The notes beneath the pieces were generated by a model. The model was given only the letters and a program-made list of their open reading frames with translations, searched no databases and had not been told where the DNA came from. The position numbers were made by a program, and so were the translations under genes. This document shows, one piece after another, positions 16,087 through 59,231 of a stretch of DNA of 64,000 nt (position 1 is its first letter; each line of letters begins with the position of its first letter). This DNA is from Obrimoposthia wandeli (taxonomy: Eukaryota): the NCBI GenBank assembly GCA_977020255.1, contig CDROCS010006174.1, positions 1-64,000 on the forward strand, written 5' to 3'.

Positions 16087-16484
16087 GGATAATCCCCTTG
16101 GCGCTTAGATGCGCACTTTATTATTTTTTAGCTGATAGAGTCGTTATGAATATATATTATCAACTAGTTTATATTTTTATACTTAGAGCCTAATATTTGA
16201 GACAGCTTCAAGAATTCGCAAAAATGCGACGAGTAAACATAGCAATATGTAAAGATAATGTAAATATATTGTCAGTAAAGGTTTGCTGAAATTTTAAATT
16301 CTGTCTGAAAAGTGGAAGATTGTATTTACAGTGCTGTTGTTTTTTATTTAGAAATGCGGCTTTATCTGAAAATTGAATCAAATTATTTTGGAAAGTACAG
16401 GAGATAATAACGATTCGAACGATAATGTGATCTATTTCTTCACCAAAAAAAAGTGATAAATATAAGATAACAGGGGTTAGTAAC

Positions 16485-44862: not shown

Positions 44863-45884
44863 TATTTATTTACCTGCCATAATTCGGCGTATCCAGAGGA
44901 GCTTTCGGTGATTACTTGGTTATTATCTCTAAAAGCAACACTATAAACAACTGCGCCGGCGGGTCTAATATCTTCGCGGGGCATAACTCGCCAACTTGTT
45001 AAGCGATCGCCAGTGGCAATATCCCAAACACTGACCTTACGAGACGGGGCGCCAGTGAGTAACTTAGTGCCATCGGGAGAGAATTGCACGGCACTAAAAA
45101 TTTCTTGGCGATTAAAGTAATTTAACGTTGAAACAAGCTCTCCGGTCTTTAAATCCCAAATGTTAGCTGCTTTTTTACTGTCAGCTGTGAAGGCATATCG
45201 GCCTTTAGGGTCGAGCGCAACCATAGTGACACGGCTAGGATGATTGAAGCGATAAATCACTTGTCCTGATTGTGTGTCCCAAACATAGGCAACAAAATCA
45301 TTAGAGCCAGAAATAGCTACTCGGCCATTGGGTATCATATCAACGGCGTTAATTTTTTCTTGATGTCCTAAAAACTCAAGGCGCCTGCCACTATCAATAG
45401 TTACGTGTACAACTTTACCGTTGCTTTGGCCGATAAGTAAGTAGTCGCCATTATTTGATACTGCAACATCGCGAATGGTTGATTCTGTGATGGACCAAAA
45501 ACCTTCAGATTGGCCATTGTTGATATTCCATAATGAAAAGTCATTGCGATTAGCGGTTAGCACATGGCTGTTATTGTCAGATATATCAGCAACTAGTACA
45601 AGATTGTCAGCGCTGTCTTGCTGTTGAGACCAATTGTATTTCAATGCGTTTTTGTCTAAATCCCATAAACTAATGCCGTGATGTATGGATGAAACAACAC
45701 TGTATTTTCCGTCATTAGAAATATTAGCCGCATACGAGCCTTCTACAGCATGTTGCCATCTTTGCTCAGGTGCTTGGCCTGAGGGCTGACAACCGACAAG
45801 CAATAGCAATAAAAACAGAAGCTTGGCTTTAAGAAATTTTAAGTTACAGTTCAGCAAAATATTAATACTTTTTTCTTGGTGCAT
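44862..45884 (-). CDS. WD40-repeat lipoprotein
   Basis: Lipobox LLVGC; repeated WD/GH motifs (GHQEKINAV, YVWD, IWD, VWD). Confidence 0.85.
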   Translation of the reverse strand: MHQEKSINILLNCNLKFLKAKLLFLLLLLVGCQPSGQAPEQRWQHAVEGSYAANISNDGKYSVVSSIHHGISLWDLDKNALKYNWSQQQDSADNLVLVADISDNNSHVLTANRNDFSLWNINNGQSEGFWSITESTIRDVAVSNNGDYLLIGQSNGKVVHVTIDSGRRLEFLGHQEKINAVDMIPNGRVAISGSNDFVAYVWDTQSGQVIYRFNHPSRVTMVALDPKGRYAFTADSKKAANIWDLKTGELVSTLNYFNRQEIFSAVQFSPDGTKLLTGAPSRKVSVWDIATGDRLTSWRVMPREDIRPAGAVVYSVAFRDNNQVITESSSGYAELWQVNK

Positions 45885-45976: not shown

Positions 45977-46735
45977 ATGAGATTTTTTAAACCGACTGTA
46001 GTCGCTGTTGCTTTATTATCAGTAATGGGTTGTCAAGAACCAGCTAAACAAGAAGAACAAGCTGCGGTGCTTGATACAGAAATACAAAAACAAGCCTACG
46101 GTTTAGGCGCTTCAATTGGTATGTACATGGAGCGTAATTTAGAAGAGCACGATAAAGTAGGCTTAACATTAGATAAGACACTTATTATTCGTGGTTTTAC
46201 GGATAGCATGGCGGGTAAATCGCAAATTGAAAAAGAAGACATTCAAGCGTTATTGATGAACTTAGATCAAGCCATGAAAGCGAAACAACAAGAACAAGCC
46301 ACTATTAGCGCTGAAGAAAGCTTAATGGCCGGTCAAAAATTCTTAGACGAAAATGCTAAGAATGAAGGCGTAGCTGTTACTGAGTCTGGTATTCAGTACG
46401 AAGTATTAACGGCAGCTGAAGGTGATAAGCCAGTAGCAACAGATACGGTTAAAGTTCACTACAAAGGTACGTTCTTAAATGGCGATACTTTTGATAGTTC
46501 ATACGATCGTGGCGAACCTGCTGTATTTCCACTGAACCGTGTTATTAAAGGTTGGACTGAAGGCGTACAACTTATGTCAGTAGGTGCTAAATATAAATTT
46601 ACCATTCCTTCAGACTTAGCTTACGGACCAAATGGTAATCCACCACGTATTCCGGGTAACTCAGTACTACAATTTGAGATTGAATTATTAGAAATTCAAA
46701 AACCTGAAGCTGCAGCGCAGGTTGGTGGCAAGTAA
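45977..46735 (+). CDS. fkpA: FKBP-type peptidyl-prolyl isomerase FkpA (lipoprotein-like N-terminus)
   Basis: VHYKGTF, FDSSY and VIKGWTEG motifs; VMGC lipobox. Confidence 0.92.
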   Translation: MRFFKPTVVAVALLSVMGCQEPAKQEEQAAVLDTEIQKQAYGLGASIGMYMERNLEEHDKVGLTLDKTLIIRGFTDSMAGKSQIEKEDIQALLMNLDQAMKAKQQEQATISAEESLMAGQKFLDENAKNEGVAVTESGIQYEVLTAAEGDKPVATDTVKVHYKGTFLNGDTFDSSYDRGEPAVFPLNRVIKGWTEGVQLMSVGAKYKFTIPSDLAYGPNGNPPRIPGNSVLQFEIELLEIQKPEAAAQVGGK

Positions 46736-47091: not shown

Positions 47092-47946
47092 TCATGAGGT
47101 CTTAAGTTTCATTTGTAATAAGGCAATAGGTAACTGTTGAATTAATGCTTGCGATGCGAAGTAAATAATCCAATTAATATGGCTTACCAAAGGGAAGTAA
47201 CCTTTGCCGTGATCAGCAAAAATCCAAAACTTACCAATAACAGCATCAGCAACCATAGCCAACACTAAGCCAATAACAGCGCACCAAAGACGAAAAGGCA
47301 CTTTATACTGCGACAGTGACTTTATAAGCCACAGTGCTGATAGGGCCAAAATACTGACCAATACAGAGTAAGATGCGGTGATTAGTGTCAATAAGCTTCC
47401 GGTGCCTGATAAATGCATATCTTGATAGGTTATTAATGCAATAGCGGTGGTTATTACTGCGGTTGTAACCATCAACTTTTTTGAGAGTCCATGCTGAATA
47501 GCTAGATTGGCAATAGCGATAACTAAAATCAGATAACCAGGAAAAAAGAACACAACGGAGTCGGCTAAATAGCTGTGCTTAATAATATTGTCGTATTGAT
47601 AGAATAGTTGAGGAAAGTTTCTATTTACTATATCGCCTAATGCACAAAATATTAATGAATATAAACATAACTTACTGAAGCTAGAGGCAATAGCGCAGTT
47701 TTGTTTAACGATAAAATTACGAATAGCGACCGCGTTGAAAATTAGTAAAGCCATGGTGGTTAATTCAACAACACCAAAAAAGATACGTTCAGTATTACCT
47801 TGAGCAATATTAACGATCCCCATCATAGCCATGACGCTTTGTATCACTGCAAAAATCCAAAAGTACAGCGCTGCTGTTGTAAAGCGATTAAGGGCAACAT
47901 TTGATGGCATATTATACTCTAGTGTTATGTTTATGGTGTTTACCAA
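47092..47946 (-). CDS. Multi-TM protein, YhhN/lysoplasmalogenase-like
   Basis: CALGDI, LAMVADAVIG and IYFASQALI resemble YhhN motifs. Confidence 0.6.
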   Translation of the reverse strand: MVNTINITLEYNMPSNVALNRFTTAALYFWIFAVIQSVMAMMGIVNIAQGNTERIFFGVVELTTMALLIFNAVAIRNFIVKQNCAIASSFSKLCLYSLIFCALGDIVNRNFPQLFYQYDNIIKHSYLADSVVFFFPGYLILVIAIANLAIQHGLSKKLMVTTAVITTAIALITYQDMHLSGTGSLLTLITASYSVLVSILALSALWLIKSLSQYKVPFRLWCAVIGLVLAMVADAVIGKFWIFADHGKGYFPLVSHINWIIYFASQALIQQLPIALLQMKLKTS

Positions 47947-48143
47947 GTTGATTAATTAACAGCTCATTTTTAATGGTTAACATTAATAAGTAGAATAACT
48001 ACTGACTAAATTTTATGCCTTGTCATTATCCATTTTTACTGATGAAAAAATAGATCACTTAATTAATCAAATTGGAATTAAATTTACAGCAAGTGCGACT
48101 GATTAAAATAGTTTCTTCTAAGAACGGTTTTACCGATTTTAGG

Positions 48144-48252
48144 CAATAAAAAAGCCTTACCGAAGTAAGGCTTGAAATGCTCGCTTTGTGGTCTAGTAAA
48201 CTAGCTTCTTTTTAGTTATTTCTTTATTTTTATTATTGTTTTTCTTCAGCGC
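48144..48252 (-). ncRNA. Candidate ~105-nt sRNA with an (AAN)8 tract
   Basis: Own sigma70 promoter, no ORF, body AAGAAAAACAAUAAUAAAAAUAAAGAAAUAAC, UUCG-capped terminator. Confidence 0.65.
48148..48173 (-). terminator. Terminator of the candidate sRNA
   Basis: Minus strand AAGCCTTAC-TTCG-GTAAGGCTT-TTTT. Confidence 0.85.
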
Positions 48253-48259
48253 GGGACAA

Positions 48260-48288
48260 TTTATAGCAAAGGCTTTTTCTCTGCGCAA
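48260..48288 (-). promoter_or_regulatory. sigma70 promoter with GC-rich discriminator
   Basis: TTGCGC-17 bp-TATAAA followed by TTGTCCCGC on the minus strand. Confidence 0.7.
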
Positions 48289-48853
48289 CAACTTTAATAG
48301 AGTATATATTCCACGAACATTTTCGTATAAAAATTTAGTGATCTCTAAGAGTTAGCTGATTTTTTCGTTCACAAGCGTAGTGTCGATTAGAAAGTTAAAC
48401 TTTTAATAAAGTAAGTTATATTAAATAATGGTTATTTTTAATTAAAATTGTTATATATCAAGGGTTAATTTTTTTTGTTAGCTGGCTAAAATCGTGTTGA
48501 TAATCGCCTGTCTGGTACACCAGTTGAACTGGTTTAGCGCTATTTTATCAAAAAAAATGATCACTGCAGGGTAAAATTCAATTTTTTAAAAGTTGATTAT
48601 TTTCCAGGAGAATTGTTTCGCTAATGTAACAGGTTGTTTATTGAGCAAGTTATGCTGGTGTTGTTCTAAGCTGAATAGTCTACAAATTATCGCATTACAG
48701 GTAACCTTGCCATTTTCTCTTTGCTTAAGTGCTCTTTTCTACTAAAAAAAATGCTGAACACTGCCGTCAGCGGTGCTAGATTTGATTTAGGACATAGATC
48801 AATAAAATTTGAAGTGATAGAATGCGCGCATATTATAGCGGAGAAGAATTTTC

Positions 48854-49921
48854 ATGACTGAATTAAAAAACGATACTTATTTGCGTGCGCTATTGCGCCA
48901 ACCTGTTGATTACACTCCTGTGTGGATGATGCGCCAAGCCGGTCGTTATTTGCCTGAGTATCGTGCAGTACGTAAAGACGCTGGCGATTTCATGTCGGTT
49001 TGTCGTGATGCCGATTTAGCTTGTGAAGTGACAATCCAGCCATTGCGCCGTTTTCCGCTTGATGCGGCTATTTTATTTAGTGACATTTTAACTATTCCTG
49101 ATGCTATGGGTTTAGGGCTTTACTTTGAAACAGGTGAGGGGCCAAAGTTTGAACGTCCGATCACATGTAAAGCTGACGTTGATAAAATAGGTATTCCAGA
49201 CCCTGAAGGCGAACTGCAATATGTTATGAATGCGGTACGTACTATCAAGAAAACGTTGAATGGCGATGTGCCATTGATTGGTTTTTCTGGCAGCCCTTGG
49301 ACGCTTGCAACATATATGATCGAGGGTGGCAGTTCAAAAGCATTTACTAAAATCAAAAAAATGATGTTTGCAGAGCCACAAACCCTACATTTATTACTCG
49401 ATAAGTTAGCTGACTCAGTTATTTTATATCTTAATGCACAAATTGCTGCTGGCGCTCAGTCAGTGATGGTATTTGATACTTGGGGTGGCGTACTTTCTCC
49501 TCGCGACTATAAAGAGTTTTCTTTGCAATACATGGCGAAGATTGTTGATGGTTTAACGCGTCATAATGATGGCCGTAAAGTGCCAGTAACATTGTTCACT
49601 AAAAATGGTGGCATGTGGTTAGAAGATATCGCTGCAACAGGTTGTGATGCAGTAGGCCTTGATTGGACCATTGATATTGAGAATGCCAAAGCACGTGTTG
49701 GTGATAAAGTTGCACTACAAGGCAATATGGACCCATCAATGCTTTACGCACCATTACCGCGTATTGAACAAGAAGTGTCAAAAATATTAACTGGTTTTGG
49801 CGATGGTGGTACTGGGCATGTCTTTAATTTGGGACACGGTATACACCCAGATGTAAACCCTGACCATGCAGGTCACTTTATTGAATCAGTTCATCGTTTA
49901 AGTAAGCCATTTCATAAGTAA
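48854..49921 (+). CDS. hemE: Uroporphyrinogen decarboxylase
   Basis: [15 protein letters not shown] and FNLGHG motifs. Confidence 0.97.
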
Positions 49922-59154: not shown

Positions 59155-59231
59155 GGGGCCATAGCTCAGCTGGGAGAGCGCCTGCATGGCATGCAGGAGG
59201 TCGGCGGTTCAGGTCCTGCTTAGCTCCACCA
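59155..59231 (+). tRNA. tRNA-Ala(GGC)
   Basis: GGGGCCATAGCTCAG...CCTGC-ATGGCAT-GCAGG...GCTCCACCA; G3:U70 pair; A32/U38 loop; T-arm garbled. Confidence 0.8.

What the first reader, a model, noticed from the sequence alone, without database searches (positions are those of the whole stretch)
48144..48288. Candidate stand-alone sRNA made almost entirely of an Hfq-type (AAN)n tract: possible CrcZ-like sponge
Seen: a well-spaced sigma70 promoter (TTGCGC-17-TATAAA) with a GC-rich discriminator like stable-RNA promoters and ~500 bp of AT-rich upstream DNA. The ~105-nt transcript has no ORF, eight consecutive AAN triplets (AAG AAA AAC AAU AAU AAA AAU AAA) followed by more A-rich sequence, a small CUAG-UUUA-CUAG hairpin, and a C(UUCG)G terminator with a U-tail. 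No upstream gene runs in this direction. Known: (ARN)n tracts bind the Hfq distal face, and Pseudomonas CrcZ uses AANAANAA motifs to titrate Hfq/Crc. Inference: a compact, possibly stringently controlled Hfq decoy or sRNA sponge that I do not recognise as a named family.
Basis: partly seen in the sequence, partly recalled or inferred. Interest (0 to 1): 0.78.

Follow-up and report, generated by a model that had tools for sequence, protein, structure and literature searches.

The report
Conserved small RNA gene beside hemE
This is a real, strongly conserved small-RNA gene of Colwellia-family marine bacteria, back-to-back with hemE; it is probably the local counterpart of the Vibrio Hfq-dependent regulator VcrX/Vcr017 and not a CrcZ-like protein sponge.

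Summary
On the minus strand, 48288-48145 carries a -35 TTGCGC, a 17-nt spacer, an extended -10 TGcTATAAA, an A-rich 5' part with eight in-phase AAN triplets, a small hairpin, an unpaired 11-mer and a strong terminator.

The whole unit is conserved, always divergent from hemE, in 41 Colwelliaceae genomes and about 100 metagenome contigs. Both helices show compensatory changes. The gene downstream differs between genomes, so this is a stand-alone sRNA gene and not a leader. Rfam has no match.

The same slot and strand next to hemE in Vibrionaceae holds Vcr017/VcrX. That is a 95-97 nt, Hfq-dependent, CRP-dependent sRNA that represses chitin-use mRNAs by base pairing. Promoter type, 5' end and architecture match. 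Sequence similarity between the two families is only sub-threshold, so I put orthology at about 0.6.

The AAN array is a Colwellia-lineage expansion of 20 to 139 nt and is nearly absent in Thalassotalea and Thalassomonas. The invariant part is the hairpin, the 11-mer GCGAGCAUUUC and the terminator.

My reading is a class-II-like, Hfq-binding, base-pairing sRNA. A CrcZ-type sponge is not supported. No RNA-seq was available, so expression is inferred.

The parts
48312..48327 (-). Dyad-symmetric promoter-upstream site TACGA-N6-TCGTG, centred about -66.5 from the predicted +1. Probable binding site of an unidentified dimeric regulator.
   Evidence: Strict TACGA-N6-TCGT is present in 101 of 115 distinct family promoters, always at the same distance from the -10. 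It occurs only once in the window. Alignment.
48292..48302 (-). Conserved A/T-rich block CTCTATTAAAG just upstream of the -35 (UP-element-like).
   Evidence: At least 90% conserved across Colwelliaceae. The 43 nt upstream of the -35 are the only conserved part of the long spacer on the sRNA side.
48283..48288 (-). -35 hexamer TTGCGC.
   Evidence: TTGC is invariant in 115 distinct promoters, most often as TTGCAG, TTGCAC or TTGCAT. The spacer is 17 nt.
48260..48268 (-). Extended -10, TGcTATAAA.
   Evidence: TGnTATAAA is invariant in all 115 distinct promoters.
48145..48253 (-). Predicted sRNA transcript, about 105-108 nt. The +1 is inferred from -10 spacing, and the 3' end falls in the U-run.
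   Evidence: Sequence and conservation as one unit. There is no expression data.
48206..48246 (-). A-rich 5' tract. It holds (AAN)8 at 48246-48223, then further A-rich sequence up to the conserved AAGAAG.
   Evidence: Unique in the window with 0 expected. A 3-nt periodicity of non-A positions is seen across 97 distinct tracts. The length varies from 20 to 139 nt in the family.
48193..48205 (-). Hairpin 1 (GCUAG / UUUA / CUAG).
   Evidence: 3 of its 5 pairs show compensatory changes, for example A-U to U-A in 14 of 40 sequences and C-G to U-A in 2.
48174..48184 (-). Unpaired, nearly invariant 11-mer GCGAGCAUUUC. Proposed seed.
   Evidence: GCGAG is invariant and the rest is at least 90% conserved in 42 sequences. 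It is unpaired in the consensus fold.
48145..48173 (-). Intrinsic terminator: 9-bp stem, UUCG loop and a U6-A-UU tail.
   Evidence: Terminator scan. 97% of cells are paired, with compensatory changes at 3 pairs.

Best explanation
Window 48253-48145 (minus strand) encodes a stand-alone, trans-acting small RNA of about 105-108 nt.

Transcription is inferred to start from a sigma-70 promoter with an extended -10. An unidentified dimeric regulator bound at a conserved dyad near -66 probably controls it.

The RNA has three modules:
1. An unstructured 5' tract of in-phase AAN triplets. I infer that it lies on the distal face of Hfq.
2. A small hairpin followed by an unpaired, nearly invariant 11-mer, GCGAGCAUUUC. 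I infer that this is the seed that pairs with target mRNAs. Its complement contains AUG, so pairing may fall at start-codon regions.
3. A Rho-independent terminator whose U-tail would bind the proximal face of Hfq.

This is the layout of a class-II-type Hfq-dependent base-pairing sRNA.

It is most likely the Colwelliaceae counterpart of Vibrio VcrX/Vcr017, which occupies the same slot and strand next to hemE. It has a diverged seed, and therefore probably different targets, plus a lineage-specific expansion of the AAN tract.

Shown here: the sequence elements, their conservation as one unit, covariation in both helices, independence from the downstream gene, and the shared position with VcrX. 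Inferred: transcription, Hfq binding, seed function and orthology.
For: 1. The whole unit, from -80 to the U-tail, is conserved on the strand opposite hemE in 41 Colwelliaceae genome loci from Colwellia, Cognaticolwellia, Thalassotalea, Thalassomonas and Pseudocolwellia. In 120 metagenome loci, 95 have the promoter, 103 have the terminator and 81 have a divergent hemE.
2. Both helices are supported. 92.5% of cells are paired, against 28-68% when the 3' partners are slid. Six of 14 pairs show compensatory change, and 0 of 500 shuffles reach the observed covariation score.
3. The nearest downstream ORF falls into 20 unrelated groups, on either strand. So the unit is neither a leader nor an attenuator.
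4. The conservation pattern fits a base-pairing sRNA: the unpaired 11-mer, the AAGAAG block and the terminator are fixed, while the tract length is free.
5. The AAN phasing is real. Non-A positions co-occur at lag 3 (0.202 against 0.152 shuffled) and lag 6, and are depleted at lags 1, 2 and 5. In 47 of 97 distinct tracts the AAN run exceeds 95% of shuffles.
6. The same slot in Vibrionaceae holds an sRNA with a -35 TTGCnC, an extended -10 TGTTAAAAA, a 5' end GCUAGCGAAAA, a variable hairpin, a conserved unpaired stretch and a U8 terminator. In V. cholerae N16961 this is Vcr017 (350273-350369, minus strand, between VC0331 and VC0332). It is a hub in Hfq RIL-seq and represses five GFP reporters by up to about 17-fold. 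A 2026 preprint renames it VcrX and reports it as 95 nt, Hfq-dependent and absent in a crp mutant. It represses chitobiase and, more mildly, a chitosugar transporter. Its promoter motif CTTTGCnnnCnnGATCA is present in locus L064.
7. There are bridging forms. The Photobacterium 5' end (CUGCGCGCUAGCAAUAAUAACAAU) resembles that of Colwellia (CCUGCGCUAAAGAAAAACAAUAAUAA). Alteromonadaceae MAGs carry a unit between nudC and hemE, as in Vibrio, that the Colwellia covariance model finds at E 0.009-0.13 at exactly the syntenic place.
8. Eight of the 17 sub-threshold hits of the Vibrionaceae profile outside that family fall on the syntenic sRNA sites.
Against: - No transcript evidence exists. No RNA run holds the locus, so the +1, the 3' end and expression itself are inferred.
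- Sequence similarity between the Colwelliaceae and Vibrionaceae families is not significant on its own. Iterated nhmmer does not join them (best E 0.52). Pairwise body alignments give z-scores mostly between 0 and 2, with a few at 3 to 3.7.
- The proposed seeds differ: GCGAGCAUUUC here against ACGACAUCUUAC in Vibrio.
- The upstream promoter motif differs in sequence and position: TACGA-N6-TCGT at about -66.5 here, against CTTTGCnnnCnnGATCA at about -72 in Vibrio.
- No target could be predicted, because the genome outside the window is not available. The only seed complement in the window is the antisense of the gene itself.
- The fold of the whole RNA is not unusually stable (z -1.1).
Confidence: 0.6

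Rival explanations
1. Hfq (or Hfq/Crc) protein sponge. The AAN array would titrate the distal face of Hfq, relieving Hfq-mediated repression globally as CrcZ does in Pseudomonas, without needing base pairing.
For: - The in-phase (AAN)8 run is enough to fill one Hfq distal face, and it is unique in the window.
- The phasing is beyond what base composition explains.
- Arrays have expanded to over 100 nt in several Colwellia lineages, enough for two or more hexamers.
- The strong extended -10 promoter suggests high expression.
Against: - The array is the least conserved part. Thalassotalea and Thalassomonas members keep the gene with only 1-3 AAN triplets.
- Selection acts most strongly on a non-A-rich unpaired 11-mer and a hairpin.
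- There is one array, not several spaced A-rich motifs in a ~400-nt RNA.
- The promoter is sigma-70 type with a dyad site, not sigma-54/CbrB type.
- The sRNA in the same slot in Vibrio works by base pairing.
Confidence: 0.12
2. A real sRNA, but the AAN tract is functionally neutral: a slippage-prone A-rich spacer tolerated in an unstructured 5' end. The RNA would work with Hfq through the U-tail only (class-I-like), with ProQ, or without a chaperone.
For: - Tract length varies widely and clusters in modes of about 22, 42, 54 and 108 nt, as expected from slippage or duplication.
- Many runs are simple AAT or AAC repeats.
- Basal members lack the tract.
- The preprint notes that many Vibrio sRNAs are little affected by loss of hfq.
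Against: - The third position inside runs is heterogeneous (AAG AAA AAC AAU AAU AAA AAU AAA), so this is not a pure microsatellite.
- G and C stay rare and the tract stays unpaired in all lineages.
- VcrX itself is reported as Hfq-dependent.
Confidence: 0.17
3. RNA sponge or decoy for another sRNA. The conserved 11-mer would pair with a partner sRNA and not with mRNAs.
For: The preprint raises a possible VcrX-Spot 42 interaction. RIL-seq in V. cholerae found sRNA-sRNA pairs such as QrrX.
Against: No partner is identifiable here. The main documented partners of VcrX are mRNAs.
Confidence: 0.06
4. Cis-acting 5' leader or attenuator of the downstream 272-aa membrane-protein gene (47095-47910).
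For: It lies on the same strand, about 235 nt upstream of that ORF in this window.
Against: That ORF follows the unit only in the window and 3 close relatives. Elsewhere the nearest gene belongs to 19 other unrelated groups and is often convergent. A MITE-like insert separates the two here.
Confidence: 0.02
5. Not expressed: a conserved DNA-level element of the hemE upstream region, such as a curved A-tract or a protein-binding region, next to a leftover terminator.
For: There is no RNA evidence. It is always linked to hemE.
Against: Compensatory base changes in two helices and an invariant extended -10 at the right distance point to selection on an RNA. The hemE promoter is a separate conserved block next to hemE.
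Confidence: 0.03

Closest known systems
VcrX / Vcr017 (VPnc0065) of Vibrionaceae. Sources: Hfq RIL-seq, Huber et al. 2022, PMC9732341; bioRxiv 10.64898/2026.08.28.747715.
   Same: - It occupies the same genomic slot and strand, immediately upstream of and divergent from hemE.
- It has a sigma-70 promoter with -35 TTGCnC and an extended -10.
- Its 5' end has the form GC(G)CUAG followed by an A-rich stretch with CAAUAAUAA-like words.
- It has the same order of parts: a variable hairpin, a conserved unpaired stretch containing CAU, and a U-tailed terminator.
- It is similar in size, at 95-97 nt.
   Different: - Profile similarity is sub-threshold.
- The seed sequence differs.
- The upstream regulatory motif differs in sequence and position.
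- Vibrio has nudC on the other side, while Colwelliaceae have variable genes there.
- Colwellia has a long, variable AAN array that Vibrio lacks.
- CRP and Hfq dependence and the chitin targets are shown only in Vibrio.
Class II Hfq-dependent sRNAs of enterobacteria (ChiX, MgrR, CyaR). The proximal-plus-distal face binding mode is stated from my own knowledge of Schu et al. 2015.
   Same: ARN/AAN motifs lie 5' of a U-tailed terminator, with an unstructured A-rich 5' part and a short conserved seed.
   Different: There is no sequence relationship. CyaR (RF00112) scores 16.6 bits against a gathering score of 47. The array here is longer and variable in length. Hfq binding is untested.
CrcZ/CrcY/CrcX of Pseudomonas (Hfq/Crc-titrating RNAs).
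   Same: Both contain AANAANAA-type motifs that could occupy the distal face of Hfq.
   Different: By my knowledge CrcZ is about 400 nt, with several spaced A-rich motifs, and is driven by a sigma-54/CbrB promoter downstream of cbrB. This RNA is about 105 nt with one contiguous array, a sigma-70 promoter and a conserved non-A-rich seed. There is no Rfam hit.

Membership tests
VcrX/Vcr017 sRNA family (Vibrionaceae) | Located directly upstream of hemE on the opposite strand. | tested here: met
   The window gene lies 565 nt from the hemE start. Most Colwelliaceae have about 200 nt. Vibrionaceae units lie at the same relative place. Vcr017 coordinates lie between VC0331 and VC0332.
VcrX/Vcr017 sRNA family (Vibrionaceae) | Significant sequence or profile similarity to Vibrio VcrX. 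| tested here: not met
   Iterated nhmmer from V. cholerae reaches 28 Vibrionaceae loci but no Colwelliaceae locus (best E 0.52). The reverse search is also sub-threshold. Pairwise z-scores are mostly 0 to 2. Eight of 17 sub-threshold hits do fall on the syntenic site, which is suggestive only.
VcrX/Vcr017 sRNA family (Vibrionaceae) | Shared architecture: extended -10 promoter, GCUAG-type 5' end, hairpin, unpaired conserved stretch, U-rich terminator, about 95 nt. | tested here: met
   The Colwellia model R1 finds the Alteromonadaceae-MAG units at E 0.009-0.13, and the Photobacterium and V. superstes units at E 0.85-2, at the syntenic place.
VcrX/Vcr017 sRNA family (Vibrionaceae) | Promoter motif CTTTGCnnnCnnGATCA and CRP dependence. 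| tested here: not met
   The motif is absent. Colwelliaceae instead have TACGA-N6-TCGT about 6 nt closer to the -35. CRP dependence cannot be tested here.
VcrX/Vcr017 sRNA family (Vibrionaceae) | Same seed and same chitin-utilisation targets. | tested here: inconclusive
   The seeds differ in sequence but share a CG..CAU.UU skeleton. Targets cannot be searched without the genome.
Class II Hfq-dependent base-pairing sRNA | Rho-independent terminator with a U-rich tail (Hfq proximal face). | tested here: met
   A 9-bp stem followed by U6-A-UU, conserved with covariation.
Class II Hfq-dependent base-pairing sRNA | ARN/AAN repeats in an unpaired region (Hfq distal face). | tested here: met
   (AAN)8, 3-nt phasing across the family, and an unpaired state in the centroid fold. 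Basal members have few triplets.
Class II Hfq-dependent base-pairing sRNA | Physical binding to Hfq, Hfq-dependent stability, and mRNA targets. | not testable with these tools
   No RNA or CLIP data exist for this organism. This is shown only for Vibrio Vcr017/VcrX.
CrcZ-type Hfq/Crc sponge | Several spaced A-rich (AANAANAA) motifs in a long RNA whose conservation rests on those motifs. | tested here: not met
   There is one contiguous array, it is the most variable part, and it is nearly absent in Thalassotalea and Thalassomonas members.
CrcZ-type Hfq/Crc sponge | Sigma-54/CbrB-dependent promoter and linkage to cbrB. | tested here: not met
   The promoter is sigma-70 type, TTGCnn-17-TGnTATAAA. 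The neighbours are hemE and variable genes.
Rfam CyaR_RyeE (RF00112) | Score at or above the family's gathering threshold. | tested here: not met
   16.6 bits against 47. The E-value is 0.86 even when only 141 nt are searched. The Vibrio unit does not hit CyaR.

The most novel reading that the evidence does not exclude
The sRNA is bifunctional. It is a VcrX-type base-pairing regulator whose 5' AAN array has been expanded in Colwellia by repeat slippage, from about 20 nt to over 130 nt. This would make it a tunable Hfq-titrating module, in which array length sets how many Hfq hexamers one RNA occupies and so couples one regulon to global Hfq availability. That would be a repeat-length-tuned Hfq sponge grafted onto an ordinary sRNA.
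Probability: 0.12. Interest if true: 0.7.

Novelty: new member of a known kind. Interest (0 to 1): 0.4.

Why it matters
- It adds an unannotated, very well conserved sRNA gene to Colwelliaceae, a family of cold-marine bacteria for which my one literature search on Colwellia sRNAs and Hfq found no sRNA study. The covariance model R1 built here can be used to annotate it.
- If the link to VcrX holds, the hemE-divergent sRNA predates the split of Vibrionales and Alteromonadales. It would then be a clear case of an sRNA that keeps its address, promoter type and architecture while its seed, its upstream regulator site and its Hfq-binding tract change. That speaks to how sRNAs evolve, the question raised by the 2026 Vibrio preprint.
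- The length-variable, phase-preserving AAN array is a natural series for testing how distal-face Hfq binding scales with the number of triplets.

Tried and rejected
- **Rfam.** The whole window at gathering scores, the spacer and the 141-nt unit at permissive E-values, and 16 related loci gave nothing above threshold. The best hits were CyaR at 16.6 bits and GcvB at 17 bits.
- **Expression.** I did not use read laying, because contigs cannot show a transcript.
- **Leader hypothesis.** Rejected by synteny.
- **Small-protein hypothesis.** Rejected. There is no start codon in the transcript, and tract lengths are not multiples of three.
- **Joining the two families.** Iterated nhmmer in both directions did not reach significance. 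Shuffled-control pairwise alignments were weakly positive only. I did not build a Vibrionaceae covariance model, because alignment A2 was too ragged for a reliable consensus structure.
- **Target search.** I looked for the seed complement in the window and in 1.44 Mb of fetched loci. Nearly all matches were the antisense strand of the gene itself, and none suggested a target.
- **Palindrome.** A search of the window for further copies of TACGA-N6-TCGT found none.
- **Literature.** Papenfort 2015 (PMC4343088) is not held, and the supplements of Huber 2020 are not held.
- **Earlier notes.** By sequence there was nothing. By words there were two other unverified A-rich or Hfq-type sRNA candidates on other pieces.

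Full report
**What is there**

The element reads on the minus strand. Its parts are:
- -35 TTGCGC at 48288-48283, then a 17-nt spacer.
- An extended -10, TGcTATAAA, at 48268-48260.
- A G+C-rich stretch, CCCGCGC, around the predicted start (about 48253/48252).
- An A-rich tract whose first 24 nt are eight in-phase AAN triplets (48246-48223).
- A conserved AAGAAG block.
- A small hairpin, GCUAG/UUUA/CUAG, at 48205-48193.
- An unpaired stretch containing GCGAGCAUUUC at 48184-48174.
- A 9-bp terminator stem with a UUCG loop at 48173-48152, followed by U6-A-UU.

The terminator scan finds this terminator. The 23-nt core of the (AAN)8 run occurs once in the 64-kb window, with none expected in 100 shuffles.

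The predicted transcript has no AUG, GUG or UUG start. The one minus-strand ORF crossing it begins upstream of the -35. The flanking genes are hemE (48854-49921, plus strand, divergent) and a 272-aa membrane ORF with no Pfam or NCBIfam match (47095-47910, minus strand).

**It is a conserved gene**

I used the hemE protein to fetch 80 genome loci. A blastn of the 171-nt unit then found it on the strand opposite hemE in 41 of them. All 41 are Colwelliaceae: Colwellia, Cognaticolwellia, Thalassotalea, Thalassomonas, Pseudocolwellia and related MAGs.

Of these, 95 carry the promoter motif, 103 carry the terminator, and 81 have hemE divergent upstream. Most of the rest are too short to tell.

Among 115 distinct promoters, TTGC of the -35 and TGnTATAAA are invariant. 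In 101 of them a dyad, TACGA-N6-TCGT, sits at one fixed distance, centred about -66.5.

In the 86-column core alignment A1, GCGAG, AAG and the terminator GCC/GGC are invariant.

**Structure**

For the two helices, 92.5% of cells form standard pairs, against 28-68% when the 3' partners are slid by 1 to 3 columns. Six of 14 pairs show changes on both sides. None of 500 shuffles reaches the observed covariation score. RNAalifold predicts the core of both helices (12 of the 14 pairs) and leaves the 11-mer unpaired. The fold of the single sequence is not unusually stable (z -1.1), which is normal for an A-rich sRNA.

**It is not a leader**

The 272-aa ORF follows the unit only in the window and three close relatives. 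Across the loci the nearest downstream ORF falls into 20 unrelated groups, and it is often convergent. Only the link to hemE is constant. The hemE promoter is a separate conserved block next to hemE. The roughly 440 nt between the two conserved blocks are specific to this clade.

**The tract**

The distance from the predicted start to the AAGAAG block ranges from 20 to 139 nt, with modes near 22, 42, 54 and 108. Thalassotalea and Thalassomonas members have only 1-3 AAN triplets, while some Colwellia have runs of 14.

Across 97 distinct tracts, non-A positions co-occur at lags 3 and 6 (0.202 and 0.175, against about 0.15 shuffled). They are depleted at lags 1, 2 and 5. In 47 tracts the AAN run exceeds 95% of composition-matched shuffles.

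So the AAN phasing is real. The array is nevertheless a lineage-specific and dispensable addition to a conserved core.

**Link to a known sRNA**

The covariance model R1 of the Colwellia core gave weak hits at exactly the syntenic place and strand in two groups. The Alteromonadaceae MAGs scored E 0.009-0.13. Photobacterium and V. superstes scored E about 1-2.

Reading those spacers showed a clear sRNA unit in all Vibrionaceae loci: -35 TTGCnC, TGTTAAAAA, a 5' end GCUAGCGAAAA, a variable hairpin, a conserved unpaired stretch and a U8 terminator.

The supplementary RIL-seq table of Huber et al. 2022 places Vcr017 at 350273-350369 (minus strand), between VC0331 and VC0332. That matches the geometry of locus L064, where the order is nudC, then the sRNA on the opposite strand, then hemE.

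Vcr017 is one of the most chimera-rich Hfq-bound sRNAs. It represses GFP fusions to vc2217 (about 17-fold), vc0911 (about 9-fold), vc2469, vc0036 and vc1442.

A 2026 preprint renames it VcrX. It reports a 95-nt, Hfq-dependent RNA that is absent in a crp mutant and accumulates in stationary phase. It represses chitobiase and, more mildly, a chitosugar ABC transporter. The preprint also describes an upstream motif, CTTTGCnnnCnnGATCA, and that motif is present in L064. Rfam has no model for it.

**How strong is the homology**

Shared features:
- The position and strand.
- The promoter type.
- A similar 5' end, with Photobacterium as the best bridge.
- The order of modules.
- The size.

The Alteromonadaceae MAG units share the nudC-hemE slot with Vibrio and the core similarity with Colwellia.

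Weak points:
- Profile searches do not join the families (best E 0.52).
- Pairwise alignment scores are only mildly above shuffled controls.
- The seed and the upstream motif differ.

Eight of the 17 sub-threshold hits of the Vibrionaceae profile fall on the syntenic sRNA sites. These hits are not independent, and they partly reflect generic promoter features. I rate orthology at about 0.6. That the element is a real sRNA gene I rate at about 0.9.

**Mechanism**

The most likely reading is a class-II-like, Hfq-dependent, trans-acting sRNA. The U-tail would sit on the proximal face of Hfq, the AAN tract on the distal face, and the unpaired GCGAGCAUUUC would act as the seed. The complement of that 11-mer contains AUG, so start-codon regions are plausible targets.

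Control probably comes from a dimeric regulator at the -66.5 dyad. Its CGA/TCG core recalls CRP-S sites (TGCGA-N6-TCGCA, from my own memory), but positions 5 and 18 and the spacing do not fit. That resemblance is a lead only.

The CrcZ-type sponge reading is not supported as the primary function. It remains possible as an added role in the long-array lineages.

**Limits**

There is no RNA data. The genome outside the window is not available, so no targets could be predicted. Whether hfq is present in this genome was not checked.

Noticed in passing
window 47943-48075: A ~133-bp element with 29-nt imperfect terminal inverted repeats lies between the sRNA terminator and the 272-aa ORF. Related copies occur three times in locus L006, and a short match occurs at window 16427-16459. 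It is probably a MITE-like repeat.
   Followed up: partly
window 47095-47910 (minus strand): A 272-aa multi-pass membrane ORF has no Pfam or NCBIfam match. It is present next to the sRNA only in the window and three close relatives (L001, L004, L005, 56-69% identity).
   Followed up: partly
L064 2749-2782 (V. cholerae): The 3' end of nudC (VC0331) overlaps the terminator of VcrX/Vcr017 on the opposite strand by about 33 nt. RIL-seq lists VC0331-Qrr1 chimeras at the nudC 3' end, just upstream of this overlap.
   Followed up: no
L162 about 14-64 and about 2200-2250: One metagenome contig carries a full copy of the sRNA gene. It also carries a second fragment holding only the terminator and seed, followed by unrelated sequence. 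This may be a partial duplication or a recombination scar.
   Followed up: no
L009, L010, L011, L013, L015, L021, L024, L030 (5' tracts): The long-tract Colwellia members carry an extra small hairpin inside the A-rich tract (for example UAGCU...AGCUA). The expansions therefore seem to include a duplicated stem-loop module and not only AAN repeats.
   Followed up: no
window 44865-45884 (minus strand): A 340-aa bacterial WD40 beta-propeller protein lies next to an FKBP-type peptidyl-prolyl isomerase (45977-46735). The pair is kept in L003 and L006.
   Followed up: no
window 59155-59227: In the rRNA spacer, the first tRNA scores only 31 bits against the Rfam tRNA model, while its neighbour scores 70 bits.
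   Followed up: no
other pieces of the same assembly (earlier notes s1-234679, s1-224411, s1-220451): The scan holds further unverified A-rich or Hfq-type sRNA candidates on other pieces. One piece was attributed to Oleispira, so the 'genome' seems to be a mixed assembly. Whether any of these is a paralogue of this family was not checked.
   Followed up: no
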